Assembly (NCBI GenBank): GCA_037379345.1
Contig: CM074521.1
Location: 25,940,704-26,004,703 of the forward strand
Length of the DNA: 64,000 bases
Source of the DNA: Perna viridis
Lineage: Eukaryota
Reading direction: 5' to 3'
Under the pieces are notes generated by a model, which saw only the letters and a program-made list of their open reading frames with translations, was not told where the DNA came from and did not search any database. Position 1 is the stretch's first letter, and each line of letters begins with the position of its first letter. The position numbers and the translations under genes are program-made. Positions 8,801-51,000 of this stretch are shown piece by piece.

Positions 8801-11800
8801 CTTTAAGCTTCAGGTGGTACTTCATCCACCTCTGCTGCTTTAAAAATTTAAATAGTCAAAAGTTTTGAATAAATATTATTTAAACTTTACACAGCAGCAT
8901 TTGTATATACATGTTGAAGATGTTTATCTCTTATTATAAATAAATTTGACAAATACTTAACAAGATATTTTACCTGTTGAAACTTTTCCATTATATATGC
9001 TGTCAGACAAAAGGACATAATTTAGGTAATTTGTTACTCACACTATTGATTTTTTAGTTTTTTTTAATATATTGAAATATTTATGTACTGACAATTGTCT
9101 GATGGTGACACAGGTTCAGAAATGTTATATCGGTCTATTTCTTAATAATTTAACAGTTCCAATGGTTTTGCCTCCAAAAGCAAGCTCTTTTTCTAAAATG
9201 ATATATATTTTACAGATCTTCTGTGAAAAAATTAGTTCTAGAGAAAAAAAACAACATGATTTTCACACATTTCGATTACTTAATGTGTTAACAAACTTGT
9301 AGAATACAAATTCAGAATATTGTATTTAAAGGGAAAACAACTCATGTAGTGAACTAGATTTTGGACAAATTAACAAAGATTTTTTTTGGTGCTATCATGT
9401 CTCCATCTTCAATTCTTTTATTTCAGATTTACAAAATGAAGAATAAAGTTCGAGGGAAGACCTTAATAATTAATAATGTGAAGTTCAAGAAATTTTCAGA
9501 GCGTGCAGGCTCAGATGTTGATGCCAAAAATATTTCCCTGTTATTTAAGGAATTACATTTTGAAGTAACACAAAGAGACAATCTCAAAAAACAGGTAAAA
9601 CAGTAGCCAATTTTCAAATTCTGGGTTGGAGTATCCCTAATTGAAAGATTTAGACTGAACTCAAATCATGCATGAATTGGTGTGTAAAATTATTGACTGG
9701 TTGCATATTTTATACATGAAGTGCTCTTCATTGAACACTTTTACAAACTAATGATACATCATATTCTTTAATTCCTTAAGTTTTGTCCATTCAAAGAGAG
9801 ATAACCTTACAATTTGATTAAACTAGGAATTAGAATTTCCAAATGGTATTGAAAAGTAGGTTGTAATAATTATACTATGAATCTACTTTTCTACTGATAG
9901 ATTTGCAACATTTAAGTGTAAGGCTTTGTAAGAATCAGGCAAAATGGGAATAATCAGAAACATGCATGTAAAAAACTCACTGATCTGACAATGTAATTTC
10001 AGTAAAGGATGATTTCTCTATTTGAAAAGACCACTATTTGATCTTGGTATAACTAGATTTGTTGAGAAATTTTTCTATAGAATGTTAGATAAAATGAGGA
10101 TTTTGAGGATTTTGACAGAGTTACCTGTCTTTGACATGTTCATTTTCAATATATTAATTTAATTACAAAATGATACAGAAAATTTCATCTTTTCCTTGAT
10201 TCTAATGTGCAAATAGTCAAATTACACTTTCAAAATGGCATTTTTTTATACCATCCTCCCACTGCCAGATTCTTACAGAGACCAACACTTAATTACAAAT
10301 TAAGCTGGAATGTTATGTACATACTTGCATCAACTGTCAACATCTCCTGTTGTATCAAGCTGCACCCTATCAAACATTTATTTGTTGTAGGAAATGGTAC
10401 AATTTCTGATGGAGGAGCGAGACAAAATAAAGGATAATGATGGAATAGAATGTCTAGTCCTCATAATCATGAGTCACGGCCACACAGTTGGTGTATATGG
10501 TGTTGATGAGGAAGAATTAGAATTAAAAACAATGACAGATTTGTTTACATCAGAACAATGCCCTAGCCTGAATGAAAAGCCAAGACTAATATTTGTTCAG
10601 GCATGTCGAGGAGGTAATACATTTACTTGTACTAAATCTACAATTTCATTTACAATAAAGAACCATTTATTCTTATGCTGTATCTAAATAATGCCTCATC
10701 TGAATTACTCAAACTTTAAACAGCAATTTTTTTAGTGACCTTCAGGTCTTTATACCTTTTGGTGAAAATTTGTTTTTCCTTTATTTAACTTCAACATTCT
10801 AAGAAGAGTATTTTCATAAGCCTTACTTACAAAATGGGGGTAATATTTGTTACATAGTCATTTAATAACACAGTAAATTCTCTACCTGGTCATGAAATGA
10901 CTCTGTAATGAATGTACCCCATGGAGTCCGAGTTGCTCATTTGCTTTTGTTACTTTGTATGTATGATTTTAGTTACTTTATGTTCTTTGTTGTGTATAAT
11001 GTCTGTTTTCCATGTCTGGTCTTTGTCCCTGGATTACATTCTTTTGATTACCGCTATGAACTTGGTTCCCTTGATTATTCTTTCTCAACATACGTACTGG
11101 AATTAATTTACTCTTTGACACATTCTAAGTCCATATCAGAACTTCTCAGCCATTTTTAGGTGTAGAAGAAATGGCTGAAAAGTTCTGATTGGCAGTGAAA
11201 ATTGTTGCAGTTACCTCAGCTTTTGATAGATGGATTGTTTTCAAATTTGATGTATTGGTTTATATAGAAGGCATATGTTGTAAGTGATTTATGTGATATA
11301 CAATATTAACTTCCTGTTTTGTGGGACTTCACCTTTTTCACAAGATTGAGTGATAGTGGAAATTTTCATCTATGAATATCTAAACTCCCAGTGGATGGAT
11401 TGATTTCAAATTAGGTTTAAAGGTTTATACAGGTAGGTCATACATTGTTAGTGAATTTCATCTCTCTGATATCATGTTCATGTACAAGTAGGGGTACACC
11501 TAGCCTGGCAACAAATGCACTTTTATGTTTTTTAAATGGGAACAGTTTATTTCAGCAGTGCTGAAGATCAGTATCAGTTCATTTAGTGTATAAAGATGAG
11601 CTGAAAGGGGCCAGACATATTTGTGCTTAGGAAGCAGCTCTTTTACCATGTTGTGAAACTAATCTATCAAAGTCTTTGTTCTTTACCATCTTTTGATATC
11701 TGTATTGCTCTTTCAAGGTGGTGTTATTTTACCATACTTAGTTAACCGCATAAGTCTAGTTAATAGAGATTTGCGCTTATTTATTTCAGAGAATGCAGAG

Positions 11801-16438: not shown

Positions 16439-18040
16439 ACAATTGTCAAAGTATTAACATTTACTTTATATATGCACATTACTCATGATTCCTATGCTGT
16501 ACATGTAACATTATTATCATAACAAAGTGAGTGGTTGATATTTCTGAGGAATAATTCTCAGAAAACGTAATTTTGAATGTGATATTGAAGTTTTGCCAAG
16601 TTTGATCTTAGTGATTAAATTTTTGCTACTATACTCTTTTTAGCTGTCATTTTTTTCAATTGAAACTTCTTCCATATCATACAGAAGAGGATTCATTTGA
16701 CACAGTTGACAATTGTATAAGACAAAGGTATTAGCCTGTAACTCCTTTTGCACTACTTGAACAATGGACCCTAGGAAATATGCTACTAGCACAGCTAATG
16801 GAGCCCAGTGTTTAAACCTTGTACCTTGAATCACCACTACACATATACATGTGCAAGAGTGTTATTGATGTATCATTGTGACGTAAAAGTCAAAATATAT
16901 TATAGTCACCAACTAATAACCATTTTCCTTGCATCTTTGATGGATATTCTGTACATGAAGCAACAGATAAGACAAAACACAATAATTACTTTAGCAGTAT
17001 AAAATGCTCAGACCAGTATACTAGCTAAAACTGACAGATCGGCTGAATGTTGCCGAATGCATTTATGCTCCAGAATCCTGGTATAAGTGAAAGCTTTGTA
17101 ATCTAGAGCAGGTGTTAGAAAGCCTCGCATATAGCTGAGAGTAAACCAAAACAGTGGTCAAGTACCCTTTCCATTGTTTTTGACCCTTGACCTTTCAATT
17201 ATTGCTCTCATCATCAACATGTGTCTACTTTGTCACTCAGGTTTCCATCATGAAAGAGTCAATAGAATCAGACCAGACCTATTACAAGTTTGGACCACTC
17301 TCCCACTTCTTGAGAAAATTAGATGCACTGATAAAAGAACTATTTGTATAGAGTATGGTTTACCATGTTATATTGTCATTTTTCTTTCCTGTATTTTCTG
17401 TTGCATATGTTTATGTTTTTTTTATTGTTATATACAATTAACTTGTCATGTCCCAAATAATACTCAATGTCACATATGGGATATTATATTCTAAATGAGA
17501 TATATAATATTCATGGGCAAAAGCTTACAATCAATATAATTTTAAAACTAGTGTGGATGAGCTAATTTTAGGTGACTTTTTGTCTGTTCTTTATATCAAT
17601 TTTCCTCAATAAAAAATTATTTTCATTTGAATTGATATCCTTTTTGAAGTGAAAATGTGAAAAGTTTCTAATACAAATGTAATTGCATATAAAACCTTAA
17701 GAACTAAAAAAAAGGTGTTTCTTGCACTTAAAAATATGTCCTCAAAATTGGATCTTATACCTTATATGTGAGAGTGACCAAAACCAGTATTACAGACAGG
17801 AAGCTGTATTTTATAACCCATTGTTTTGCTAAATGTAGGGACAATGCTTTTAAGTTAGATGGAATCATCAGACTTTGATTCAAAATGGTATATTTTTGCT
17901 GATTTTATTCTACACACCAAAAGTATATCAAGAAATTTTAATAACAGATAAAAGAAAATAATACAAACAACCTCATGTTAACAAAACATTAAAAGTAACA
18001 GAAAGAATTTTAGATTATGTCCTCAGATTGTTAACTAATG

Positions 18041-18093
18041 CTATCGTTTTCCTTCCATTAAATCTGATCCTGTCTGTTGTACCTCTTCTTGAA
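18041..18093 (-). CDS. probable terminal coding exon, VQEEVQQTGSDLMEGKR*
   Basis: Strong polypyrimidine acceptor ttttttttctttttcag; the phase-1 join with the CTCK exon gives a 17-aa tail ending TAG. Confidence 0.65.
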
Positions 18094-21000
18094 CTGAAAA
18101 AGAAAAAAAATTCTTGTTCATAAATAGTATAACGAGTAATCAAGAGAATCAAGGTTCTAGCGGTAATCAAAAGAATATAATTCTGGGACAAAACCCAGAC
18201 ATGGAAAATAGACATACACAACAAAGAACATAAAGTAACTAAAATCATGCATAAAAGAAACAAAAGCAAACAAGCAACTCGGACTCCACTAAAAACTGGG
18301 AGCATGGACCAGGTGCACCAGTAGGGTAAGCGTACTCTGCTTTTCTAGAAACACCCGCCGAGTTGTTCATAAAAAGTCAAGCCCGGGGTAGACGAAGGAG
18401 GAAAGGAAAACTATGAAACGTTGAACAAATAAATTTTCATTGCACGGATGGATACACCGTAAATGCAATGGCACTCTTTGTGAATTGGCCAGGGAAAGCT
18501 GATTGATATTTATTGTCTGGGCTGTTGTCTCAAGGATTTTTCTCTAAATATCATTAGTCAAGGTACAAACAAATTTATCAATCAAGCCCTTTTTGGAAAA
18601 GTAAAAAAAGAAAACATCAAAAACTGAACTATATACACATGGTAGATGAAACTCTACAGTAAACTAAAGATCTGTTTATAGGAGGGTGGAAAGAAATTAT
18701 GAACAATCATTCTCCTTCCAGTAATTTTGATGTAGTACTTAATGACAAGAATAGGTTTACACATTTTATAAAGAAACAGTCACAAAACTGACTGAAATGT
18801 ACATAATAATTGAAAAAAAAACAAAGGAAATTTAGTGAGGAAACGGTTTTATAGTTTTAATACAGTGTGCTCCCTGGGCCATTTAAGGTAATGTTAAGTT
18901 ATTATAACTAATTATTTTATAGATAGTGTTTCAAATGTGATGCTATAATCCAAAGGGAAAGATGCTATCCAAATTTTCTATTTTACCAGGATGCTGTTTG
19001 AATTTTCTAAGGAGAACACTATTGAAAATTTTTTTTTAATTTAGGACAAGTTTTCAGTTTTAAAGGTACCTACCTCATTTCAAATGATTTCCAATACTCT
19101 GTCATAAAATTTTGGCTTAATCCATCCCCCAATAAAAAAAAAACCAACAAGAGTGTGAGGTCTATGTAGTATAATATCACTTCATACCTGTATTAGCACA
19201 GCTGTTACATTCACATTTGTTAAATCTTGGAATCATGGCTGTTAAAACACTGTCAATTCCTTCACATTTGACATTGACAGTATCAAATGCAGCAATTGTT
19301 CCTGTGCAGCATTTACAGTTTTTATTGGAGGATTCATCATAATTGCTTCCAGATGGCATTAGCATTGGCATGTTCATACTATCACCACATCCTCCTGCAC
19401 AATATGTGTATGTGACATTACCAACAGTTTCACAACCATCTCTTGTCAGTTTTCCTGTGGCTGTGTACATCTTGCATGTGTCTGAAAAAGAGGCCCATCA
19501 TTGTTATATATAATCAAAGATCACCTTTGTTACAGTGAAAAGCCAAGAAATAATGAAGACATATACATCAAACATCATGCAGAAAACATCAGGAAAACAC
19601 TTCAAGTGGGCACAGATTCAGGCAAGAGCACACCCACCCCAATATTGGGAGAAAAAAAATTATTTGCATGAAATATTGATTTTCTTCACAAATTCTACTT
19701 AAAAAATTTGCTTTCCTCCCGTCACCAGGCATTTTATTCTATTAGCGCCACCTCTAACCTGAAATTCTGGATCTGCCCTTGTGAAGCATGGCCCTGATGT
19801 ACAGGAACATTTTTATACTGGGGAGGGGAGCCTGGGATTATTTTGAAAAAAAAAATTAAAATCTTTCCAAATTTTTTTTAAAGCCATAGAGAGAAAAAAA
19901 AAGATTTAATATTTCTCCCATTACGTAACAATATAGATTTTCCAAAAAATATTACAACTTTGGCTGCTGCTAAAAAAATTACCTGTAATTACTGTCACAC
20001 TTGAGTCAAAGAAAAATTTCTAACTCAACACCCCCACCCCCCCAAGAAGAAAATAGTATGCGCCTTAACTTTTCTTCTGTTCTCGAATACCAGCAAATCC
20101 TCATGTATATTTAAGTAACAGTCTTTTATATAAATCAGACTGAACATGATTCATGCATGTCAAAAACACACCAATTTTACTTCTATTTCCTATTCAGAAT
20201 ATCAGCTACAGACCACATAAACAGTCTTGGTCTTTTATTTGGGTGTTGCACTTTTGAAGTAAAATGTATATAGATTGTACATGAAATTAGGACTTTTCAA
20301 GAGTTATCTTTCTTGATTGAGTTTGATTTGGTTGATTTTAGTGGGAGATGAATGTATCATTTTCTCAAAAGTGCAGATCTGAATACAAAAAAAACTAATT
20401 TTACCTAAACATATAGCATCTGAAGAAAGAAATAACATTGTTCTGGTTTTTTTTACACTATGAATCACCTGTTCCATAGGCAGAGTTCGAAATACATATG
20501 GATTGGTAATTAATATTAAGGCCTAATCTTCAAGATAGCATTTTTACAGTTTAAAATATAAAAAAAAAAAAAACCACATATATCAGTTGCACATCCAAAA
20601 ATTAATTGTATTTATGTAAATGAAAAGTTGAAACCAAAGATTCTTAGAGCTAATGATCATTGAAAGACCTGCCATTTAAAATAACTTGCAATTGACAATT
20701 TTACCTGCATCTTCCATAAAGTTCAATGAACAAATCAGTGCTTACCTGTTATAGGTTGACATCTATGACAGCATTCACCATCTTTAACTAACTCTTCTCC
20801 CTATAAAATAGTCAAATAACTGCTGTTAAACAAACAGGTTGCAATAGTATGACCAACGGTCTCTTTATTAGAAATTGAATCTGGTCAACATATATTGCCA
20901 CATAATGACATTCCAAATTTTGAAAACAGCAAGTTGTTTCTTTCAGTCCAGAAAAAGGGCATTTTCTTTTTGAACAGAAAATGAAACCATGATCAAACTT

Positions 21001-36000: not shown

Positions 36001-39000
36001 GTGTATGAGCCAGAAAATAAGTTTTTGCATATAGTATAGGTATAACTGATACAGAGAACAAGGTATAAAATGGAAATTTGTCATTATTTCGGGCTTTAAA
36101 ATGTAAGGCACAGGACATATCTAAAACAAAGTTCTGATCAAATGTACCATAATCAAATGAAACATAAACATGTACAAAACACAAAATTCTAACAGCTTCT
36201 TTCAGGACATTGTATCATAATGTCTTTGCATAATTAATACTATTTTTTGTTGAAGGTAGACATGAGACAGGCGTCTACTTAAAATCATGTATAGATACAT
36301 TATATAAGCCTTAGCAAAAGACTGGTACCATGTTCATTTTACAGTCGAATTTAGCAAGATAATGCAAGATAATTTTCTTTAAACAATTGTCCATATCAAG
36401 CTCTTTATCAATAATGTCATATAATTATGGGAATAAATTCAGGTCTTGTCCATGTTTTTCCTTCTTTTCAGGGCTTACTGCATAAAAAAACACTCTAATT
36501 CCTTCGCGTATTACCAATAGATGAACAATTTCCAAAACCATTAAAATACAAATTTTTGACTGCAGTAATAAAGTTTGGCAGTGCAAATTAGTGATCAAAA
36601 TCAAGATTATAGTTCAAAAGATTTCTACAAAAAATATAAAACAGTTGCCATCAGAGAAGTTGTCTGACTAACTGTTGTACCAGATGTAGTACCTTGAGTA
36701 GTTGTTGGTGGAGTAGTGGTACCTGAAGTGGTCTGGCTAACTGTTGTTCCAGATGTAGTACCTTGCGTAGTTGTTGGTGGAGCAGTGGTACCAGATGTTG
36801 TCTGGCTTACTGTTGTACCAGATGTAGTACCTTGTGTTGTTGGAGCAGGGGTACCTGATGTGGTCTGGCTGACTGTTGTTCCAGTTGTAGTTCCTTGTGT
36901 TGTTGGTGGAGCAGTGGTACCTGAAGTGGTCTGACTTGTGGTTCCAGAAGTAGTACCTTGAGTGGTTGTTGGTGGAGCAGTGGTACCAGATGTTGTTTGG
37001 CTAGCTGTAGTTGCTGATGTAGTTCCTTGTGTGGTTGGTTGTGCTGTAGTGACTGATGTAGTCTGACTGGTTGTAGTTCCAGATGTGGATTGAGTTGTTG
37101 ATCCAGTGGGTGGTGCTGATGGTGTTGTCTGTCCTGTTGTTGTTACTTAATAAAACATGTTTATTTTGTTTTAAAAACTTCACTTAGATATATGTTCAAA
37201 GAGTAATAAAGAGAACCAAGATTCTACTGGAATCAGGAGAGTGTAATCCAATGACAAAGACCAGACAGGGAACACAAAGAACATAAAATAACCAAGATAA
37301 TACATAAACACCAACAAAAGTAAATGAGCCAATAAGGGTTAAAATATCAGTTGTAAACCATAATTTATATACATTAGTAGCTATCAGTTGTAAACCATAA
37401 TTTATATACATTAGTAGCTATAGCAGAGCAAATCTGATTAGATAGAAAGGGATACAATGGTTGTTTCCTTCATTTATTAATTCGAGAAAATACATTTTAC
37501 CATGTATTTAATAATAAAATGACCTTAAAACCAATGAACTGATGCATATGGTCAATAGAAAATCACCTGTTGTCTGTGTTCCTACTGTGGTAGTTCCTGT
37601 TGGTGTTTGACCTGTTACTGGAGTTGTAGCAGAAGTGGTGCCTGATGTGGTACCTTGTGATGTAGTAGGAGCAGGAGTACCTGATGTGGTCTGGCTAACT
37701 GTTGTGCCAGATGTAGTTCCTTGTGTTGTTGGTGGAGCAGGAGTACCTGATGTGGTCTGGCTGACTGTTGAGCCAGATGTAGTTCCTTGTGTTGTTGGTG
37801 GAGCAGTGGTACCTGAAGTGGTCTGACTTGTGGTTCCAGAAGTAGTACCTTGAGTGGTTGTTGGTGGAGCAGTGGTACCAGATGTTGTTTGGCTAGCTGT
37901 AGTTGCTGATGTAGTTCCTTGTGTGGTTGGTTGTGCTGTAGTGACTGATGTAGTCTGACTGGTTGTAGTTCCAGATGTGGATTGAGTTGTTGATCCAGTG
38001 GGTGGTGCTGATGGTGTTGTCTGTCCTGTTGTTGTACCTTAATGAAACAATGTTTATTTTGTTTTAAAAACTTCACTTAGATATATGTTCAAAGAGTAAT
38101 AAAGGAAACCAAGATTCTACTAGAAATCAGGAGAATGTAATCCAATGACAAAGACCAGACAGGGAAAATAAATTATATAAAATAACCAAGATAATACATA
38201 AACACCAACAAAAGTAAATGAGCCAATAAGGGTTAAAAATATCAGTTGTATACCATAATTTATATACATTTGTAGCTATAGCAGAGCAAATCTGATTAGA
38301 TAGAAAGTGATACATTGGTTGTTTCCTTCTTTTATTAATTAGAGAAAATACATTTTACCATGTATTTAATAATCAAAATGACCTTAAAACCAATGAACTG
38401 ATGCATATGGTCAATAGTAAATCACCTGTTGTCTGTGTTCCTACTGTGGTAGTTCCTGTTGGTGTTTGACCTGTTACTGGAGTTGTAGCAGAAGTGGTGC
38501 CTGATGTGGTACCTTGTGATGTTGTAGGAGCAGGAGTACCTGATGTGGTCTGGCTAACTGTTGTACCAGATGTAGTTCCTTGTGTTGTTGATGGAGCAGG
38601 AGTACCTGATGTGGTCTGGCTGACTGTTGTGCCAGATGTAGTTCCTTGTGTTGTTGGTGGAGCAGTGGTACCTGAAGTGGTCTGACTTGTGGTTCCAGAA
38701 GTAGTACCTTGAGTGGTTGGTGGTGGAGCAGTGGTACCAGATGTTGTTTGGCTAGCTGTAGTTGCTGATGTAGTTCCTTGTGTGGTTGGTTGTGCTGTAG
38801 TGACTGATGTAGTCTGACTGGTTGTAGTTCCAGATGTGGATTGAGTTGTTGATCCAGTGGGTGGTGCTGATGGTGTTGTCTGTCCTGTTGTTGTACCTTA
38901 ATGAAACAATGTTTATTTTGTTTTAAAAACTTCACTTAGATATATGTTCAAAGAGTAATAAAGAGAACCAAGATTCTACTGGAAATCAGGAGAATGTAAT

Positions 39001-42000
39001 CCAATGACAAAGACCAGACAGGGAACACAAAGAACATAAAATAACCAAGATAATACATAAACACCAACAAAAGTAAATGAGCCAATAAGGGTTAAAAATA
39101 TCAGTTGTTAACCATAATTTATGTACATTTGTAGCTATAGCAGAGCAAATCTGATTAGAGAGAAAGTGATACATTGGTTGTTTCCTTCTTTTATTAATTA
39201 GAGAAAATACATTTTACCATGTATTTAATAATCAAAATGACCTTAAAACCAATGAACTGATGCATATGGTCAATAGAAAATCACCTGTTGTCTGTGTTCC
39301 TACTGTGGTAGTTCCTGTTGGTGTTTGACCTGTTATTGGAGTTGTAGCAGAAGTGGTGCCTGATGTGGTACCTTGTGATGTTGTAGGAGCAGGAGTACCT
39401 GATGTGGTCTGGCTAACTGTTGTACCAGATGTAGTTCCTTGTGTTGTTGGTGGAGCAGGAGTACCTGATGTGGTCTGGCTGACTGTTGTGCCAGATGTAG
39501 TTCCTTGTGTTGTTGGTGGAGCAGTGGTACCTGAAGTGGTCTGACTTGTGGTTCCAGAAGTAGTACCTTGAGTGGTTGTTGGTGGAGCAGTGGTACCAGA
39601 TGTTGTTTGGCTAGCTGTAGTTGCTGATGTAGTTCCTTGTGTGGTTGGTTGTGCTGTAGTGACTGATGTAGTCTGACTGGTTGTAGTTCCAGATGTGGAT
39701 TGAGTTGTTGATCCAGTGGGTGGTGCTGATGGTGTTGTCTGTCCTGTTGTTGTAACTTAATGAAACAATGTTTATTTTGTTTTAAAAACTTTACTTAGAT
39801 ATATGTTCAAAGAGTAATAAAGAGAACCAAGATTCTACTAGAAATGAGGAGAATGTAATCCAATGACAAAGACCAGACAGGGAACACAAAGAACATAAAA
39901 TAACCAAGATAATACATAAACACCAACAAAAGTAAATGAGCCAATAAGGGTTAAAAATATCAGTTGTAAACCATAATTTATGTACATTTGTAGCTATAGC
40001 AGAGCAAATCTGATTAGAGAGAAAGTGATACATTGGTTGTTTCCTTCTTTTATTAATCAGAGAAAATATATTTTACCATGTATTTAATAATCAAAATGAC
40101 CTTAAAACCAATGAACTGATGTATATGGTCAATAGAAAATCACCTGTTGTCTGTGTTCCTACTGTGGTAGTTCCTGTTGATGTTTGACCTGTTACTGGAG
40201 TTGTAGCAGAAGTGGTGCCTGATGTGGTACCTTGTGAGGTTGTAGGAGCAGGAGTACCTGATGTGGTCTGGCTAACTGTTGTACCAGATGTAGTTCCTTG
40301 TGTTGTTGGTGGAGCAGGAGTACCTGATGTGGTCTGGCTGACTGTTGTGCCAGATGTAGTTCCTTGTGTTGTTGGTGGAGCAGTGGTACCTGAAGTGGTC
40401 TGACTTGTGGTTCCAGAAGTAGTAACTTGAGTGGTTGTTGGTGGAGCAGTGGTACCAGATGTTGTTTGGCTAGCTGTAGTTGCTGATGTAGTTCCTTGTG
40501 TGGTTGGTTGTGCTGTAGTGACTGATGTAGTCTGACTGGTTGTAGTTCCAGATGTGGATTGAGTTGTTGATCCAGTGGGTGGTGCTGATGGTGTTGTCTG
40601 TCCTGTTGTTGTTACTTAATAAAACATGTTTATTTTGTTTTAAAAACTTCACTTAGATATATGTTCAAAGAGTAATAAAGAGAACCAAGATTCTACTGGA
40701 CTCAGGAGAGTGTAATCCAATGACAAAGACCAGACAGGGAACACAAAGAACATAAAATAACCAAGATAATACATAAACACCAACAAAAGTAAATGAGCCA
40801 ATAAGGGTTAAAATATCAGTTGTAAACCATAATTTATGTACATTTGTAGCTATAGCAGAGCAAATCTGATTAGAGAGAAAGTGATACATTGGTTGTTTCC
40901 TTCTTGTATTAATCAGAGAAAATATATTTTACCATGTATTTAATAATCAAAATGACCTTAAAACCAATGAACTGATGCATATGGTCAATAGAAAATCACC
41001 TGTTGTCTGTGTTCCTACTGTGGTAGTTCCTGTTGGTGTTTGACCTGTTACTGGAGTTGTAGCAGAAGTGGTGCCTGATGTGGTACCTTGTGATGTTGTA
41101 GGAGCAGGAGTACCTGATGTGGTCTGGCTAACTGTTGTACCAGATGTAGTTCCTTGTGTTGTTGGTGGAGCAGGAGTACCTGATGTGGTCTGGCTGACTG
41201 TTGTGCCAGATGTAGTTCCTTGTGTTGTTGGTGGAGCAGTGGTACCTGAAGTGGTCTGACTTGTGGTTCCAGAAGTAGTACCTTGAGTGGTTGGTGGTGG
41301 AGCAGTGGTACCAGATGTTGTTTGGCTAGCTGTAGTTGCTGATGTAGTTCCTTGTGTGGTTGGTTGTGCTGTAGTGACTGATGTAGTCTGACTGGTTGTA
41401 GTTCCAGATGTGGATTGAGTTGTTGATCCAGTGGGTGGTGCTGATGGTGTTGTCTGTCCTGTTGTTGTAACTTAATGAAACAATGTTTATTTTGTTTTAA
41501 AAACTTTACTTAGATATATGTTCAAAGAGTAATAAAGGAAACCAAGATTCTACTGGAAATCAGGAGAATGTAATCCAATGACAAAGACCAGAAAGGGAAC
41601 ACAAAGAACATAAAATAACCAAGATAATACATAAACACCAACAAAAGTAAATGAGCCAATAAGGGTTAAAATATCAGTTGTAAACCATAATTTATGTACA
41701 TTTGTAGCTATAGCAGAGCAAATCTGATTAGAGAGAAAGTGATACATTAGTTGTTTCCTTCTTTTATTAATCAGAGAAAATATATTTTACCATGTATTTA
41801 ATAATCAAAATGACCTTAAAACCAATGAACTGATGCATATGGTCAACAGAAAATCACCTGTTGTCTGTGTTCCTACTGTGGTAGTTCCTGTTGGTGTTTG
41901 ACCTGTTACTGGAGTTGTAGCAGAAGTGGTGCCTGATGTGGTACCTTGTGATGTTGTAGGAGCAGGAGTACCTGATGTGGTCTGGCTAACTGTTGTACCA

Positions 42001-45000
42001 GATGTAGTTCCTTGTGTTGTTGGTGGAGCAGGAGTACCTGATGTGGTCTGGCTGACTGTTGTGCCAGATGTAGTTCCTTGTGTTGTTGGTGGAGCAGTGG
42101 TACCTGAAGTGGTCTGACTTGTGGTTCCAGAAGTAGTACCTTGAGTGGTTGTTGGTGGAGCAGTGGTACCAGATGTTGTTTGGCTAGCTGTAGTTGCTGA
42201 TGTAGTTCCTTGTGTGGTTGGTTGTGCTGTAGTGACTGATGTAGTCTGACTGGTTGTAGTTCCAGATGTGGATTGAGTTGTTGATCCAGTGGGTGGTGCT
42301 GATGGTGTTGTCTGTCCTGTTGTTGTAACTTAATGAAACAATGTTTATTTTGTTTTAAAATCTTTACTTAGATATATGTTCAAAGAGTAATAAAGAGAAC
42401 CAAGATTCTACTGGAAATCAGGAGAATGTAATCCAATGACAAAGACCAGACAGGGAACACAAAGAACATAAAATAACCAAGATGATACATAAACACCAAC
42501 AAAAGTAAATGAGCCAATAAGGGTTAAAAATATCAGTTGTAAACCATAATTTATGTACATTTGTAGCTATGGCAGAGCAAATCTGATTAGAGAGAAAGTG
42601 ATACATTGGTTGTTTCCTTCTTTTATTAATTAGAGAAAATACATTTTACCATGTATTTAATAATCAAAATGACCTTAAAACCAATGAACTGATGCATATG
42701 GTCAATAGTAAATCACCTGTTGTCTGTGTTCCTACTGTGGTAGTTCCTGTTGGTGTTTGACCTGTTACTGGGGTTGTAGCAGAAGTGGTGCCTGATGTGG
42801 TACCTTGTGATGTTGTAGGAGCAGGAGTACCTGATGTGGTCTGGCTAACTGTTGTACCAGATGTAGTTCCCTGTGTTGTTGATAGAGCAGGAGTACCTGA
42901 TGTGGTCTGGCTGACTGTTGAGCCAGATGTAGTTCCTTGTGTTGTTGGTGGAGCAGTGGTACCTGAAGTGGTCTGACTTGTGGTTCCAGAAGTAGTACCT
43001 TGAGTGGTTGTTGGTGGAGCAGTGGTACCAGATGTTGTTTGGCTAGCTGTAGTTGCTGATGTAGTTCCTTGTGTGGTTGGTTGTGCTGTAGTGACTGATG
43101 TAGTCTGACTGGTTGTAGTTCCAGATGTGGATTGAGTTGTTGATCCAGTGGGTGGTGCTGATGGTGTTGTCTGTCCTGTTGTTGTAACTTAATGAAACAA
43201 TGTTTATTTTGTTTTAAAAACTTTACTTAGATATATGTTCAAAGAGTAATAAAGGAAACCAAAGTTCTACTGGAAATCAGGAGAATGTAATCCAATGACA
43301 AAGACCAGACAGGGAACACAAAGAACATAAAATAACCAAGATAATACATAAACACCAACAAAAGTAAATGAGCCAATAAGAGTTAAAAATATCAGTTGTA
43401 AACCATAATTTATGTACATTTGTAGCTATAGCAGAGCAAATCTGATTAGAGAGAAAGTGATACATTGGTTGTTTCCTTCTTTTAATAATTAGAGAAAATA
43501 CATTTTACCATGTATTTAATAATCAAAATGACCTTAAAACCAATGAACTGATGCATATGGTCAATAATAAATCACCTGTTGTCTGTGTTCCTACTGTGGT
43601 AGTTCCTGTTGGTGTTTGACCTGTTACTGGGGTTTTAGCAGAAGTGGTGCCTGATGTGGTACCTTGTGATGTTGTAGGAGCAGGAGTACCTGATGTGGTC
43701 TGGCTAACTGTTGTACCAGATGTAGTTCCTTGTGTTGTTGGTGGAGCAGGAGTACCTGATGTGGTCTGGCTGACTGTTGTGCCAGATGTAGTTCCTTGTG
43801 TTGTTGGTGGAGCAGTGGTACCTGAAGTGGTCTGACTTGTGGTTCCAGAAGTAGTACCTTGAGTGGTTGTTGGTGGAGCAGTGGTACCAGATGTTGTTTG
43901 GCTAGCTGTAGTTGCTGATGTAGTTCCTTGTGTGGTTGGTTGTGCTGTAGTGACTGATGTAGTCTGACTGGTTGTAGTTCCAGATGTGGATTGAGTTGTT
44001 GATCCAGTGGGTGGTGCTGATGGTGTTGTCTGTCCTGTTGTTGTAACTTAATGAAACAATGTTTATTTTTTTTTAAAACTTTACTTAGATATATGTTCAA
44101 AGAGTAATAAAGGAAACCAAAGTTCTACTGGAAATCAGGAGAATGTAATCCAATGACAAAGACCAGACAGGGAACACAATGTATATAAAATAACCAAGAT
44201 AATACATAAACACCAACAAAAGTAAATGAGCCGATAAGGGTTAAAAATACCAGTTGTATACCATAATTTATATACATTTGTAGCTATAGCAGAGCAAATC
44301 TGATAAGAAAAAAGTGATACATTGGTTGTTTCCTTCTGTTATAAATTAGAGAAAATATATTTTACCATGTATTTAATAATCAAAATGACCTTAAAACCAA
44401 TGAACTGATGCATATGGTAAATAGAAAATCACCTGTTGTCTGTGTTCCTACTGTGGTAGTTCCTGTTGGTGTTTGACCTGTTACTGGGGTTGTAGCAGAT
44501 GTGGTGCCAGATGTGGTACCTTGTGATGTTGTAGGAGCAGGAGTACCTGATGTGGTCTGGCTAACTGTTGTACCAGATGTAGTTCCTTGTATTGTTGATG
44601 GAGCAGGAGTCCCTGATGTGGTCTGGCTAACTGTTGTACCTGATGTAGTTCCTTGTGTTGTTGGTGGAGAAGTTGTACCAGATGTGGTCAAACTAGCTGT
44701 TGTACCAGTAGTAGTACCTTGTGTAGTTGGTGGAGCAGTGGTACCAGATGTTGTCTGGCTAGTAGTTGTACCAGACGTTGATACACTTGTTCCTGTTGGT
44801 GGAGCTGGAGGTGGAGGAGTGGTAACTGATGTACCTAAATTAGAAACCAGTTTGAAGATAAACTACATTTAAAAGCAGTGGGTTGTACATGAAATATTTC
44901 GAACTGTTGAAATAATACATTTTTCCCTTATGGACATTTTCCTGTTAAGATATCCAATGTATGAAGGGGTCATGTTACCTTATATTTCTTTTTTATAATT

Positions 45001-48000
45001 CAATAAAAACAATTAAGTTCATATTGTGTATAAGGCAAATTGTTATCTTACAATACGATATTACAATGATAACTGTTAGATATTGTGGAGGTATTCTCCC
45101 TCACTACAAGTATACTGCTTGTATAAAATGCAGCATTTAATGAAAGTAATAGGTTCCTATACTAGGGAATATAGATGCAATATTGATGCACAAAAGCAAA
45201 AGTTGATTAAAAAATGAAAATTGGTAAATACGAAAAAGACAGAAACCATGAGAAGGAAAGATATATTTTCAAAATATATTATAATTTCACAGAAATAAAT
45301 GAACCAAATATCTTTGCTTTTAAGTTTCTTACCTGACGTAGTTCCTGTTGTTGTTGATTGTGTTGTAGAAACACTTGTGGTTGCTAAAATGAAAATAGAT
45401 AGTTAATGAAATTTTTATGAGATTATTTTTTATTCTTCTATTTAGTACAAATTTCAGGTTTTTTTGTAGATTGTAAAGAACATGACAGTCTGAGATATTT
45501 AATAATTTTTTTTAACTTAGTATCCTTTATCAATACTGGAATAAGTAAACTAATGCTTGTAAAGCCAAGTCTTAATTGATGCTTGAATGCATGCACATTC
45601 AATTAACAGTTCCAGCACTACTAATACAACAACTTTTACTGTTCTTTTTTTAAATGTAATTGGAAGTATGAAGCCAATATGTATCACGTGTCAATGGAAT
45701 TATATATGTCTCACCAGGTGTGTAACACACTCTGAAAGTGACATCACTTAAACTGCCTGGTGTAGATATATCTGTCATAGGTTTGAAGAAAATAACCAGT
45801 GAATCAGCACTCTTCATTTGGAAATTCAAACCAATGGTATTTATGGCATCTTTTGTGCTGAACGATTGCTGTAAATAAGTGAATATAATAGCATTTAACA
45901 AACTTTCTACAGTTCATATAGTTTATCCTGGATAAGCTATCTGACTTGACTTCATCAACCATTTCACCCTTTCTAATAAATGACAAGAAGCTTAACTGAT
46001 TAATTTTTGTACTTTTTAACTTTATAGATTGAACTTTGAAGAAATGAAATGGATAAATGAGCTTTCAAGTTATATTGTAAATTAAAATGTACTATGCATT
46101 CATTCTTAAATGATATATACTGAAACAAAACAAAGTAACACCATGAGAAAAGGACCTGATTTCAATCTACAAAGAATTAATCATGCATTATTTTGTACCA
46201 AATAACATTTTGAAAACTGATGAAGGTACTGTTTGGCTGCAGTCAGGCAATTCTAATTTTTATGTAAAGAATTTGTGGGTTTTACTTCACCATAAAAAAC
46301 ACTACTTCACTGAATCTTGAAAAATAAAATGTATTTGTACCGCAAAAATAATATTAGTTTCCTTATGTAGTGAACAAATCACATATGTAATATGCACACA
46401 TGATAAATCGTTTCCTTGTATATAAAATTTCAAGTTTGTAAAACCAAAAAGTACAAACTTTTAAGTACTATTAATGAACTGCAAATTGAACCTTTGGATA
46501 TCTGAATGAAATATTTGAGTGAGTGCAAAATAGGAAAATCTCGGAAATCGCCGGTCAGATTGAATTTTTATTCAACTTGTCTTTAAAATGTGGGACATTT
46601 TAAAAACAAATAAAGGAAACAATCACAGTTATCCTGGTTCAGGATTTTGAACAGTTCAGACATCCTTTAGTAAGATATGACTATTACATTATTCTTAAAC
46701 TCATTGTGCACATTATTACAGGAAAGAGCAAACAGCTAAAATATAAATTTTCATGTTTATTTACTGAGAAATTAAAAGACTATGCAGATACTTTTTAAAC
46801 ATGTCTGTTATTTTGGCTTTCTCCTGACTTCAAAACCTTAAAGTGCTAAACACCCACCGTTTGTGTCATAACTGTTTCATCATTAAGTGTCAATGATATT
46901 GTAACCTCTGCAATGTTTACTGTACTGAATGAACCATCTACGAATACAACATCATTTCCTTTGACATTATATGTGACAGAGGTTCCATTCTCACTGGCTT
47001 CATAGGATGCCGTAGAACTCTTCAGAGAATCAAGTACACTTTGCCCAGGTTTTTCATTTGAAGATGTGATGACAAGATCACTATCATCATTGTTATTGTA
47101 ATCAAATATCTTAGGATGCTCACAGACACCTAAAGAGAAATATATAATATAAAATTAAATGTTGCAGTATTTAATGTATACTAAAGTTTATATTATAAAG
47201 TTATAACCAAGTGATAATGAAATGATCTACAACTAATAGTAGCAAAAAAAAAATGAAATCAAAATGATGAAGATCACTTAATTTCTAAGTTTGACATTCG
47301 ATTGTTCTCAAAAGCTTAAATTCAGAATTGCACATGCATAATATGATATTATAAAACTTGAAATATATATTAAAAAATACAAAATTGAGGTGACACCTAA
47401 ATTATTTAACTAAATAAAAATAATAAGGTAATTTTTTGGGAAGTATAAAAGTGTTTCTTTAAAAAGTCTAGTAAAACTTACCTGATGGTGTTGAACTTGT
47501 TGACACAGCAGTTGTACCTATGGAAAATTAAAAATAAATGTAATGAAGCCTATGGAAAAAAGGTGATATTTGCTAGTTTTACACAAAGATCCACTTTCAG
47601 TAATGAGTATGTTATTTTTTTTCTCTACTCAAGATAGTAAAGTTTCGATTTCCAATATGCAAGCTTTAGCTTTTACTTAGGGGGTGCAGTCAATCAAATC
47701 ATGAATACACTGAAGGAGAATCGGTTTCCCCCTTGAAATCCACAGAAAAATGGAAAATATAAAATGGCAAGGAACCTCTCACCGAAATTTAATCACAGCC
47801 TGTGATTAAAAAGTCACATTCATTTTATACCACCGGCTTAGGAAGGGAGAAAAATACTTATTTTGCACTTAACCAAATATTAATAACTTTTTTACCTCAT
47901 TTGGGGAACCATTGGATTGATAGTGGTCAAGGAAAGTATTCTTTTCATTATTTTATTTTTGTTATTACATTTTACTTGATTTTATTAAAATGATGTTAAC

Positions 48001-51000
48001 AATTAGCCCATCCTTGTTCATTATGATTTCTTGTCATTTTTTAAATTTTAATTTGTTTTGTCCCAAATTCTTAATATAACACATCATTCAACACACAGTA
48101 AATTTGTGTACACATCTCTGAAACTGTAAGATTCATTTAAATTAAGCAAGACTTTTTGTTATCAAGTGTAGATAATGTAATGCATTACCAGTTGTTCCAG
48201 TTGTCAGCGTTGTTGTAGCTGTTCCTAAAATTACAAAGAAAAAAACAACATGAATTAATAACAAAAAAAAACAACAAAAAACAAAAACGAAAAGGAAATA
48301 GTTCAATTTTAGGCACACACTGTAATCTTTATATTGAATAATATACTCGAAGATATAAATATTGATACATCTTTTTTATAATTATCAATTTAGTTTATAG
48401 TAACTCTTGTTTTTTCTAATTTTCATGCAGATATAGTAGGTACTTGTCATTTAGAAGGAGTTGAATTTGATATGACCTAGAAATCAACAATGGTTTTATT
48501 TATTTTTTTTCTTCAGTAAACTGATATCTATTTATTTTGTAATTTGTTGGTCTGTTGTATGTGATACTTTCTAAGAAAGTTCCCCCCTTTGACAATGTTG
48601 ATGGTGTAACATTATAAAGGAAGAAAATACACCAGTACATGTTCTTTATTAACAGAAAAGAAAAGTCTGAACAAAACCGTTAACAAATAGGTTTAACAAT
48701 TTATGTAAATTGCAAGAAAAGAACTTACAGTATTTCAAATTAATGAATTTTATGAAAAAAAAATTCAGTAATTAAATAGTTGTATCTTAGTAAATAGTGA
48801 CTTAAAACGATTCAAGTCCATATAATCATGATCAATTCACGTTTACACACAATTGATTGCCAATAAATGATATTTATATTAACATGTACTTAACCTAAAG
48901 CTGAATTTGACTTCCATAAATAAATAATCAGTATACCACCATATTTAAACTTATTTAAATGAATAAAACTAAAAAAATTAAAGTACAAAAGTTTTGACAT
49001 GTTATAAAGTTTTCATGCAGGAAAATAATATAATAATTTTTCCATTGTGATACATGTATTATAGTCTTAAAAACTGTATTAACAACTGTTATCATTTGTC
49101 AATTTGTATTTACTAAATGTGTATATATTTATTCTTGGGTTTTATTATCAGTATTTTTTTTAAATAGATTCACTGGATTTACTTACCTGGTGTGTAACAA
49201 ACTCTAAACTCAACAATTAATCCAGGTGGTGTTGAAATATTAATCTTTGGTTTCACTGTTACTCTCAAGACATCTGCTTCTTGCATGCGGAAATCCATGG
49301 TAAAGACATTCGACAAATCCTTCGTTTGGTAAATTTTCTACAATCCAAAAATATGTAACCGTGTAAATAGGAACAAGCCTACTGCAAGACAACAACATTT
49401 GAAAAAAAGAAACATAATATTGAAAATATAAGAAAATACATTTATCATGCCTTTTTTGTTCATACTGATAATATCCTGCAAAGAATTAGCCTTACTTAAT
49501 AATATATATTGTATGTAACAATTTCAATCCATCTGGTACATACGTGAATTATAAAAATCTAAATGAGTTCCAGGTAAATATGAACATAAGAACCACTAGA
49601 ATTTCAAAGAATTAGATTTTTGTTCAGTAAAATTTATTATATTCTAAGTTTTTTTTCTAAATCAAATACTGAATGTGTGCATCATAAAACATGACGGAAA
49701 TAAATAAGTTATGCTTTTATTTCTTAACTTTTCAAACTTCATACCTTTTCTGATGTAACTTCAGTTCCTTCCACAGTTACCAAAGACACTGTTATTTCTT
49801 CAATGTTGATAGTTTCAAATGTACCATCAACAAATGACACTGGATTTCCTTTGCCATTGATGATATAATTAACTTCACTTCCATCATCATTTGGCACAAA
49901 GTTTATGCCAGATCCCTTCAATGAATTGACACCTTCTTCACCGGGTTTGCCATTAGATATTTCAATTTGTAGATCCTTGTCATCTTTAGCACTATAATTG
50001 ATTGTTTTGGGATTTTCACACAACGCTAAATGTAAAAGAAAAAATCAATTATCTAATGTAAATTGCAATAAAATAGAAATAGTGTGAGCAAGCTAACAAA
50101 GACAATACTCCTCACTTTACATGCGGTTGAATATAAATTATAACCTGTGAGTTCATCAAAATCCATTCAGTTTAGGAGGAAAATTGCACTTACTAAGTTT
50201 TAGCATGTAAAACCCTTGTGTTGTATTATCTCCATTTGGAGTCCCCTGACAGTAAATATATTACTGTGCATTCCCATTTATATTCAGTAGTAACAAAACT
50301 TCAAATGAGCATCAAAACCTAAAAATTGCACACATATGCTTGATTTTTTTTTTTACAGAAGGCCAAGGTAATGGAGTAGATCATTTTTTGGAAAATTGAA
50401 TTCCACTTTCTAAGATTAAAATACAGTTTCGATACCTAAAAACTGAAAAAAAGTCTACTTCATGTAAAACTCATTTTGAAAATTGCACACCTTGATGATC
50501 GAATATTTTTGTTGGAAATAATCACCGATATTTTAAAAATGTATGCCATTTTTCAAGATCAGATTTGTAAATTCATTTTTCACATCTGTTTTTGTTAAGA
50601 TTTTTTTTTTCAATTTACCGTCATTAAAACTTCAATTTGGGTATCTAGGAAATGAAATTGTGAATTAGGCATAAATGTGTTAAACTATTCAATGAAAATG
50701 TTTGTGTCATAAAATGGTTAAACTCGAAAGGTGTACATAGTTCCTTTTTTTCATTAGTATATATTTTTTCATGTACATTTATATATGATGCCCAACATTA
50801 CTATAAAGTTTTATCAAAATCCCTTGAGAGGTTAAGAAGGGTGTGCGCATACAACAAATGTTAACAGACAGGCTGACAGACAGATGGGGAGATTCCTATA
50901 TATCAACGAACTTGTTTTGTAGGGAGGGGGATAAAATTACTTTTTCTGAACATTATTTAAAATTTACTGTCGACATTACACCTTAAAGGCTAATAATGCT

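What the first reader, a model, noticed from the sequence alone, without database searches (positions are those of the whole stretch)
36850..44834. Mucin length built from a tandem array of chimeric, frame-symmetric exon cassettes
Eight exons of exactly 471 nt (157 aa, phase 1/1) repeat every ~859 bp with near-identical introns. The flanking exons are the parents: 44433-44834 supplies the 3' half and donor, and the exon starting at 37145 supplies the acceptor and 5' half. Each array exon is therefore a chimera created by unequal crossover between the PTS repeats of two neighbouring exons, then amplified. Vertebrate gel-forming mucins mostly hold their PTS in one giant exon. Here any number of cassettes can be gained, lost or skipped in frame, giving a potential length dial at both DNA and splicing level. 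This is the best candidate for an undescribed system in the window.
Basis: partly seen in the sequence, partly recalled or inferred. Interest (0 to 1): 0.8.

Follow-up and report, generated by a model that had tools for sequence, protein, structure and literature searches.

The report
Tandem exon-intron cassettes in bivalve mucin
A highly expressed mucus-protein gene of an invertebrate (probably a bivalve) lengthens its sugar-coated region with eight near-identical copies of an 859-base exon-plus-intron unit; the array is real, transcribed and spliced, but it is a further example of a way of building mucins already described in chicken Muc13 and schistosome SmPoMuc genes.

Summary
On the minus strand there are eight exons of exactly 471 nt, all phase 1/1. 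They are separated by 385-388-nt introns that are 95-99% alike, with a period of 856-859 bp.

Stranded RNA reads cover the exons and not the introns. They join units to units at the predicted GT..AG sites. A DNA run's word depth (up to 9.06x the flank) fits the assembled nine copies of each unit part, so this is not an assembly expansion. The unit occurs nowhere else in the 723-Mb genome.

The chimera reading is largely supported:
- Exon B matches the unit for its first 263 columns, then diverges.
- Exon A is 70% alike before column 237 and 96% after.
- Both break points fall in one 27-nt tract, and the array spans 9.07 units, as one unequal crossover between A and B predicts.

However, every Pro/Thr/Ser-rich (PTS) exon checked shares a homologous start and phase-1 acceptor, and many share the end motif and donor. 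There are more than 30 PTS exons in several arrays. "Parents" therefore cannot be told from array edges.

The "undescribed system" claim fails, because chicken Muc13 and SmPoMuc are precedents. RNA joint counts fit inclusion of about 6-8 cassettes, with no sign of regulated skipping. Copy-number variation between individuals is untested. This scan had already noted similar exon arrays in the same genome.

The parts
45333..45383 (-). Small 51-nt PTS exon upstream of exon A (phase 1/1, predicted)
   Evidence: Read from the sequence..TTTTAG| acceptor and |GTAAG donor. Not covered by the reads laid.
44433..44834 (-). Exon A, 402 nt, phase 1/1. The 5' part (44834-44671) is its own header type. The 3' 238 nt (44670-44433) is the first, slightly diverged (95.8%) partial copy of the array.
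   Evidence: A 30-mer unique to its 5' part (44761-44790) appears as loose ends in RNA run X21 and in contig runs X14 and X16, whose RNA label is a guess.
44047..44432 (-). Intron after exon A, 386 nt, 92.8-94.8% identical to the intron copies between units
37567..44046 (-). Eight cassette exons of 471 nt (157 codons) with seven 385-388-nt introns between them. Exons: 44046-43576, 43187-42717, 42328-41858, 41470-41000, 40614-40144, 39755-39285, 38896-38426, 38037-37567.
   Evidence: RNA depth lies on exons only, with GT..AG joints at 37567, 38426, 39285 and 41000 (donors) and at 37145, 38896, 39755 and 40614 (acceptors).
37146..37566 (-). Last intron, 421 nt: an array intron with a 37-bp internal tandem duplication at 37345-37421
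   Evidence: RNA joint 37145/37567.
36693..37145 (-). Exon B, 453 nt, phase 1/1. Its first 263 nt (37145-36883) form the last partial array copy, 99.6% identical to the unit consensus. The rest is its own repeats with no trailer. The donor CAAG|GTAC lies inside a PTS repeat.
   Evidence: Joint 35767/36693 with CT..AC ends in 65 reads of X21 and in contigs of X14 and X16.
35461..35767 (-). Next exon downstream, 307 nt, start of a Cys-bearing globular domain
   Evidence: RNA joint at 35767 and 110 loose ends at 35461 that continue at 35050-35079. No Pfam match.
36883..44670 (-). Full extent of the high-identity tandem array: 7788 bp = 9.07 units of 859 bp
   Evidence: Break points from the exon alignment

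Best explanation
This is the central part of a large, highly expressed, secreted mucin-like gene on the minus strand. Its Pro/Thr/Ser-rich (PTS) region is not one giant exon. It is a long series of homologous, frame-symmetric (phase 1/1) cassette exons. Each cassette has a conserved start (TTGQTTP..PTG), several 22-23-residue repeats, and a conserved end before the donor.

In this stretch, an 859-bp segment was duplicated by unequal homologous recombination between two misaligned neighbouring cassette exons. The segment comprises the 3' part of one cassette, its intron, and the 5' part of the next cassette. It was then amplified by further unequal exchange or gene conversion to nine copies. 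That gives eight whole 471-nt exons plus the partial copies inside exons A and B.

The exons are spliced one after another into the mRNA. Together they add about 8 x 157 = 1256 residues of presumably O-glycosylated PTS sequence.

Shown here: the anatomy, the break points, transcription, splice sites, unit-to-unit splicing and the copy number in a DNA run. Inferred: the recombination mechanism, the order of events, glycosylation, and that the array keeps changing length in populations.
For: - Eight 471-nt phase-1/1 exons with a period of 856-859 bp.
- Nine homologous intron copies. The seven between units are 94.6-98.5% alike pairwise, the one after exon A is 92.8-94.8% alike to them, and the last differs mainly by a 37-bp duplication. 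Shared variants form a mosaic among non-adjacent units, as expected from repeated exchange or conversion.
- Sharp break points in A (column 237) and B (column 264) lie within one 27-nt identical tract, and the array spans 9.07 units.
- Where checked, PTS exons across the gene share homologous headers and trailers and phase-1 AG| and G|GT boundaries.
- In stranded RNA run X21, first mates lie on the + strand at depth 50-240 over exons and about 0 over introns.
- GT..AG joints are seen at every predicted site in the laid stretch except the donor of the fifth cassette. They include a donor carrying the sixth cassette's private variant joined to a GT-type acceptor, as the genome order predicts.
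- DNA run X1 has word depth up to 9.06x the flank.
- The unit is unique to this locus.
- The exon frame is 64-70% T+S+P.
- Downstream exons match TSP1, TIL, VWC and cystine-knot families.
- Exon diversity among units (0.0099) is one third of intron diversity (0.0293), consistent with constraint on the coding part.
Against: - Polarity cannot be shown. The unit has the gene's generic cassette layout, so it may have pre-existed, with A3 and B5 converted later.
- RNA joints between units are ambiguous in placement, because the copies are near-identical and only 6 kb could be laid. Apparent 'goes back' and long-skip joints show this, so inclusion of each individual cassette is not proven.
- The fifth cassette's private variants are almost absent from the RNA run (depth 13).
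- Exon A's acceptor and the A-to-first-cassette junction were outside the stretch laid.
- Contig word depth is only a rough copy-number measure.
- Glycosylation and secretion were not tested, and the N-terminus lies outside the window.
Confidence: 0.8

Rival explanations
1. The unit exon is not a chimera. A generic cassette (header + repeats + trailer) already lay between A and B and was amplified. The similarity of A's 3' part and B's 5' part comes from later gene conversion spreading out of the array.
For: Other arrays of the same gene have exons with a homologous header (77-82% identity at 12 sites) or a homologous trailer (73-80% at 9 sites), with the same phase-1 boundaries. Exon B is the atypical exon: it has no trailer and its donor lies inside a repeat. 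A3 and its intron are about 4-5% diverged from the units, like an edge copy that is homogenised less often.
Against: Two independent conversion tracts would end at unrelated positions of the 859-bp unit. Here both ends fall within 27 nt of each other, and the array is 9.07 units long. The chance of this is roughly 2 x 27/859 = 0.06.
Confidence: 0.2
2. The array is a regulated length dial: cassettes are skipped in frame in a tissue- or condition-specific way, and/or copy number differs adaptively between individuals.
For: Phase 1/1 symmetry and identical splice sites make any gain, loss or skip frame-neutral. RNA coverage and joints sum to about 6-7 rather than 8 cassettes. The fifth cassette's private variants are nearly absent in RNA. 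The idea has been raised for chicken Muc13, and copy-number differences are documented for SmPoMuc.
Against: The acceptor classes in RNA joints (214:85:99) match the genomic 5:2:2 expected for equal use of all nine junctions. The totals are within noise of full inclusion, since the single-copy joint has only 65 reads. One DNA run gives about 9 copies, the same as the assembly. No second individual could be compared.
Confidence: 0.12
3. The copy number is an assembly artefact: an expansion of a shorter repeat.
For: Near-identical 859-bp repeats are hard to assemble.
Against: Unit-shared contig pieces in DNA run X1 have 8.8-9.06 times the depth of the single-copy flank. A unique PTS piece of exon B has 1.02 times the flank depth, so composition bias is not the cause. 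The units also carry distinct variants in a consistent mosaic.
Confidence: 0.03
4. The eight exons are a cluster of mutually exclusive alternative exons, of which only one is used per transcript.
For: The exons have equal size and phase, as in known mutually exclusive exon clusters.
Against: RNA reads join the donor of one unit directly to the acceptor of another: hundreds of reads, against 65 at the single-copy junction. Summed array coverage equals several cassettes per transcript.
Confidence: 0.01

Closest known systems
Schistosoma mansoni polymorphic mucins (SmPoMuc), exon-2 genomic repeats (PMC2576457)
   Same: The mucin repeat region is encoded by a tandem array of about 1-kb genomic units. 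Each unit is one in-frame exon plus intron. Introns are more than 94% identical and up to about 20 copies occur. The authors invoke concerted evolution by unequal crossing-over or gene conversion.
   Different: There the exon is 27 bp (one 9-residue repeat), the units are separated by microsatellites, and the genes form a multigene family with exchange between loci. Here the exon is 471 nt and itself holds five to six 66-69-nt repeats plus a header and trailer. The unit is confined to one locus. No sequence homology is claimed or was tested.
Chicken Muc13 PTS domain encoded by multiple exons (PMC1552070)
   Same: The PTS repeats are spread over many nearly identical exons. [quoted passage not shown]
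   Different: Muc13 is a transmembrane SEA-domain mucin with 20-residue exons. Here the protein is a secreted-type one with a TSP1/TIL/VWC/cystine-knot tail and 157-residue exons with nested repeats.
Human LPA kringle IV-2 and DMBT1 SRCR exon arrays (from general knowledge, not checked here)
   Same: Kilobase-scale tandem units of exon(s) plus intron are frame-neutral, so unequal crossover changes protein length in steps.
   Different: Those units encode folded domains, not mucin sequence. Their copy-number polymorphism is documented, whereas here it is untested.
Vertebrate gel-forming mucins (MUC2/5AC/5B/6)
   Same: Long PTS region with tandem repeats and a C-terminal cystine knot.
   Different: Their PTS lies in one large central exon (stated in PMC1552070, and in the abstract of PMC13345508). 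Here it is split into more than 30 exons. No VWD domain matched within the window or within about 250 kb upstream of it. The nearest same-strand VWD matches lie 252-265 kb upstream.

Membership tests
Mucin (functional class: PTS-domain glycoprotein) | Long domain rich in Pro, Thr and Ser | tested here: met
   T+S+P is 0.64-0.70 in every cassette open frame. The eight cassettes give about 1256 residues.
Mucin (functional class: PTS-domain glycoprotein) | Tandem repeats within the PTS domain | tested here: met
   66-69-nt period with about 5 copies per exon, plus the 859-bp exon-intron repeat.
Mucin (functional class: PTS-domain glycoprotein) | Dense O-glycosylation and secretion | not testable with these tools
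   The N-terminus lies outside the window and there are no glycoproteomic data.
Gel-forming mucin / VWF-type family | C-terminal cystine knot | tested here: met
   The translation of 19180-19497 (-) scores Cys_knot 24.9 bits (cut-off 24) and DAN 33.8 bits.
Gel-forming mucin / VWF-type family | N-terminal VWD-C8-TIL assemblies | tested here: inconclusive
   The whole-genome VWD scan gave no match in the window or within about 250 kb upstream. The nearest same-strand matches are at C11:26257142-26257489 and 26269364-26269612, 252-265 kb upstream. Whether they belong to the same transcript is untested.
Gel-forming mucin / VWF-type family | PTS domain in one large central exon | tested here: not met
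   More than 30 PTS exons with introns lie between about 36.7 and 102 kb in extended window coordinates. The splice sites of this array are confirmed by RNA.
Mucins with exon-intron cassette repeats (SmPoMuc / chicken Muc13 type; an architecture, not a homology family) | Each repeat unit of the PTS region is a separate in-frame exon inside a tandem genomic repeat that includes the intron | tested here: met
Mucins with exon-intron cassette repeats (SmPoMuc / chicken Muc13 type; an architecture, not a homology family) | Repeated exons are spliced consecutively into mRNA | tested here: met
   Unit-to-unit GT..AG joints in stranded RNA reads
Mucins with exon-intron cassette repeats (SmPoMuc / chicken Muc13 type; an architecture, not a homology family) | Copy number differs between individuals | not tested
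   Only one DNA run was laid, giving about 9 copies as in the assembly.
Mutually exclusive exon cluster | Only one exon of the cluster per transcript, with no joints between cluster exons | tested here: not met
   Hundreds of unit-to-unit joint reads, against 65 at the single-copy junction.

The most novel reading that the evidence does not exclude
The gene's PTS region is organised as a set of independently homogenised, frame-neutral cassette arrays. These include this 8 x 471-nt array, a 6 x about 639-nt array and several variable-length arrays. Their copy numbers differ between individuals or populations, and/or their cassettes are skipped by tissue. Mucus polymer length would then be tuned in 157-residue steps on top of the 22-residue in-exon repeats: a two-level length dial in a filter-feeding invertebrate's mucus.
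Probability: 0.15. Interest if true: 0.55.

Novelty: new member of a known kind. Interest (0 to 1): 0.35.

Why it matters
The array shows, with RNA support, that a secreted invertebrate mucin can hold its glycosylated region in dozens of symmetric exons rather than one giant exon. It also preserves the break points of the founding unequal crossover unusually cleanly.

It is a useful annotated example for gene prediction, because such arrays are easily mis-modelled. It is also a candidate locus for studying copy-number variation of mucus proteins in a bivalve. It does not reveal a new mechanism.

Tried and rejected
- Rfam scan of 35-46 kb: no RNA family in the introns.
- Pfam scan of the neighbouring globular exons: no family for 35337-35792, 46849-47154 or 49742-50044.
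- Quantifying cassette inclusion from contig depths of X14 and X16: rejected, because unitig means mix junction words with shared exon words.
- Reading the 'goes back' and long-skip joints as back-splicing or exon skipping: rejected. The donor and acceptor sides are identical between units and three units lay outside the 6-kb stretch, so placement is arbitrary.
- Reading the 1.17-fold excess of X1 depth over assembly word counts as extra copies: rejected. The maximum ratio is 9.06, which fits nine copies that share those words.
- No protein database search was run on the cassette. It is low-complexity, and the length window of the word search would exclude full-length relatives.
Full report
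**What is there**

The window is AT-rich (about 31-34% G+C outside the repeats) and has no N. Between 36.6 and 44.9 kb, Tandem Repeats Finder reports nine blocks of a 66-nt repeat plus a tenth block of 69-nt period at 36662-37086. The repeat finder reports an 856-859-bp higher-order period.

The coding sense is the minus strand. There the repeat reads as Thr/Ser/Pro-rich sequence (T+S+P 0.64-0.70), while the plus strand gives only the antisense Val/Pro/Asp frame.

Each unit has a ..TTAAG| acceptor and a G|GTGATTT donor, which delimit an exon of exactly 471 nt. The eight exons are 44046-43576, 43187-42717, 42328-41858, 41470-41000, 40614-40144, 39755-39285, 38896-38426 and 38037-37567. Every exon begins with the last two bases of a codon and ends with the first base of one. 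Junction codons are G|TT, G|TA or G|GT, so the exons are phase 1/1 and frame-neutral.

The nine introns, from the one after exon A to the one before exon B, are all homologous:
- The seven between units are 385-388 nt and 94.6-98.5% alike pairwise.
- The intron after A is 92.8-94.8% alike to them.
- The last intron carries a 37-bp internal duplication.

**Is it real?**

A whole-genome search places the window at C11:25940704-26004703 of a 723-Mb, 46-contig assembly. It finds eight full copies and two partial copies of the unit, all here and nowhere else. Only a roughly 135-nt piece of the intron matches an interspersed repeat on many chromosomes at 80-85%.

I laid four public runs on 35300-41299. 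In DNA-like run X1 the single-copy flank has word depth 110.9, and a unique PTS piece of exon B has 113.6. Contig pieces inside the array reach 473-1005, which is 4.3-9.06 times the flank. The same words occur 3.4-7.95 times in the assembly. The ceiling of about 9 matches the nine copies of each unit part in the assembly, so an assembly expansion is very unlikely.

**Transcription and splicing**

In the stranded RNA run X21, first mates lie almost only on the plus strand, which fits a minus-strand transcript. Depth is 50-240 on exons and about 0 on introns.

Joints with CT..AC ends (GT..AG on the minus strand) sit at the predicted sites: donors at 37567, 38426, 39285 and 41000, and acceptors at 37145, 38896, 39755 and 40614. 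No joint from the fifth cassette's donor (40144) was listed.

A joint at 35767/36693 fixes the donor of exon B. It is seen in 65 reads and also in contigs of two other studies, X14 and X16. Exon B is therefore 37145-36693, 453 nt, phase 1/1. Its donor CAAG|GTAC lies inside a PTS repeat, and B has no trailer.

A 30-mer unique to exon A's 5' part turns up as loose ends in X21 and in contigs of X14 and X16, so exon A is expressed too.

The copies are near-identical and three units lay outside the 6-kb limit, so joints between units are placed arbitrarily. This explains the 'goes back' and long-skip rows. I do not read them as back-splicing or skipping.

Two things can still be counted:
- The three acceptor classes TT:GT:TA occur as 214:85:99, against the genomic 5:2:2.
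- All unit joints together amount to about 7 junction equivalents, against 65 reads for the single-copy joint.

Both counts fit consecutive inclusion of most or all cassettes (about 6-8). They exclude mutually exclusive use. They give no sign of class-specific skipping.

One oddity remains. The private 3' variants of the fifth cassette are almost absent from this RNA (depth 13). A SNP difference between animals is the simplest reading, because TA-type acceptor joints are as frequent as two junctions require.

**The chimera claim**

In a MAFFT alignment of exons A, the eight units and B:
- B equals the unit consensus over columns 1-263 (1 difference in 260). It then has 9 differences in 104 plus gaps, and is unrelated after column 370.
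- A is 70% identical over columns 70-236 and 95.8% over columns 237-474.

Both switches are significant (Fisher p = 7e-5 and 1e-12). They fall in the same 27-nt tract, which is identical in all three exon types.

The high-identity array thus runs from 36883 to 44670, or 9.07 units. An integer number of units plus a short shared tract is what one unequal crossover between misaligned exons A and B predicts. Two independent conversion tracts would coincide this closely with a chance of roughly 0.06. I therefore accept the mosaic (B-type 5' part plus A-type 3' part) as most likely the footprint of the founding event.

The shared variants among non-adjacent units form a mosaic rather than a nested pattern. 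This indicates later repeated exchange or conversion.

**A caveat from the wider gene**

I fetched 80 kb upstream. Minus-strand PTS exons continue to about 102 kb in extended window coordinates, in several locally homogenised arrays:
- five variable-length exons at 54.7-63.5 kb;
- three at 69.7-73.3 kb;
- three at 81.5-86 kb;
- six uniform units of 1564-1565 bp at 86.7-95.4 kb, with a likely 639-nt exon.

Twelve other exon starts share a homologous header with an AG| phase-1 acceptor. Nine other exon ends share a homologous trailer with a G|GT phase-1 donor. The unit exon therefore has the generic cassette layout of this gene. Exon A is a variant with a different header, and exon B is the atypical one. 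'Parents' and 'array edges' cannot be told apart from one genome.

**What the gene is**

Downstream exons (19-31 kb) match TSP1, TIL, VWC (below cut-off) and a cystine knot.

Upstream of the PTS arrays, from about 110 kb to beyond 144 kb, lies a tandem array of at least 15 units of about 2.24 kb. These encode Cys-bearing globular domains.

The nearest same-strand VWD matches are 252-265 kb upstream. Whether all of this is one transcript is untested. I therefore call the gene a secreted mucin-like protein with a spondin/mucin-type tail, not a proven gel-forming mucin.

**Comparison with what is known**

Chicken Muc13 has its PTS repeats spread over many near-identical exons. Its authors already suggested length control by alternative splicing (PMC1552070).

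Schistosoma SmPoMuc genes have up to about 20 tandem units of about 1 kb, each with a 27-bp exon. Their introns are more than 94% identical, repeat numbers differ between individuals, and the authors discuss concerted evolution by unequal crossing-over or conversion (PMC2576457).

From general knowledge, LPA kringle IV-2 and DMBT1 are further cases of frame-neutral exon-intron arrays.

This locus differs in three ways:
- Exon size is 157 residues, with nested 22-23-residue repeats.
- Exons are more conserved than introns (pairwise diversity 0.0099 against 0.0293).
- The break points are cleanly preserved.

The same scan has already noted similar exon arrays elsewhere in this genome.

**Verdict**

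The array is real, expressed and well defined. Its mechanism is ordinary unequal crossover of exon-intron units. It is a new member of a known kind. The length-dial idea remains an untested hypothesis, with no support at the splicing level in the one RNA data set examined.

Exons were treated singly by reference.

Noticed in passing
L002:2747-10000 and L006:1-1352 (extended window coordinates 86747-95352), minus strand: A second uniform cassette array in the same PTS region: six units of 1564-1565 bp. Each has an identical 261-codon open frame, a header homologous to the 471-nt cassettes, and a likely 639-nt phase-1/1 exon with donor CTG|GTACTTTA. The prediction is from sequence only.
   Followed up: partly
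L003:6526 through L007 and L004 to L008:9546 (extended window coordinates about 110.5-143.5 kb), minus strand: At least 15 tandem units of about 2236 bp, each with two exons of about 120 codons for Cys-bearing globular domains (CFTGTASTTP.CEITDGMESP...). The array runs off the fetched DNA. No Pfam match. It is weakly similar (30%, E = 0.001) to the domain exon at window 35461-35767.
   Followed up: partly
G000:C11:26257142-26257489 and 26269364-26269612, minus strand: VWD domain matches (86 and 36 bits) on the same strand, 252-265 kb upstream of the window end. They could be the N-terminus of the same giant gene or belong to a neighbour. Continuity was not tested.
   Followed up: no
G000:C11:25763706-25790107, plus strand: Another array of PTS-like exons, 77-79% similar to part of the cassette and spaced about 3.2-3.3 kb, about 150 kb below the window on the opposite strand.
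   Followed up: no
window, in each array intron, about 202-337 nt into the intron (e.g. 41520-41655); also 2880-3212, 10896-11156, 18018-18344, 25977-26225: The array intron carries a fragment of a very abundant interspersed repeat, which was amplified together with the cassette. It shows 80-85% matches on many chromosomes, and DNA-run word depth is about 4e5 at 37296 against 111 in the flank.
   Followed up: partly
window 36693 (donor of exon B) and exon position 188 of every cassette: Exon B uses CAAG|GTACTAC, a piece of the PTS repeat itself, as its donor. A near-identical motif inside every cassette, plus four more AG|GTA sites per exon, gives no listed joint in the RNA run.
   Followed up: partly
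window 40144-40300 (3' part of the fifth cassette): RNA depth is only 13, against about 100-240 in the other cassettes, and no joint from its donor is listed. Its private variants (exon positions 377 and 435) are nearly absent in run X21. This is either a SNP difference between animals or rare inclusion.
   Followed up: partly
window 37345-37421: A perfect 37-bp tandem duplication (2.1 copies) inside the last array intron makes it 421 nt instead of 388.
   Followed up: yes
window 9358-10684, plus strand: Open frames that look caspase-like (..IIMSHGH..) on the opposite strand, upstream of the mucin tail. Not scanned against any family library.
   Followed up: no
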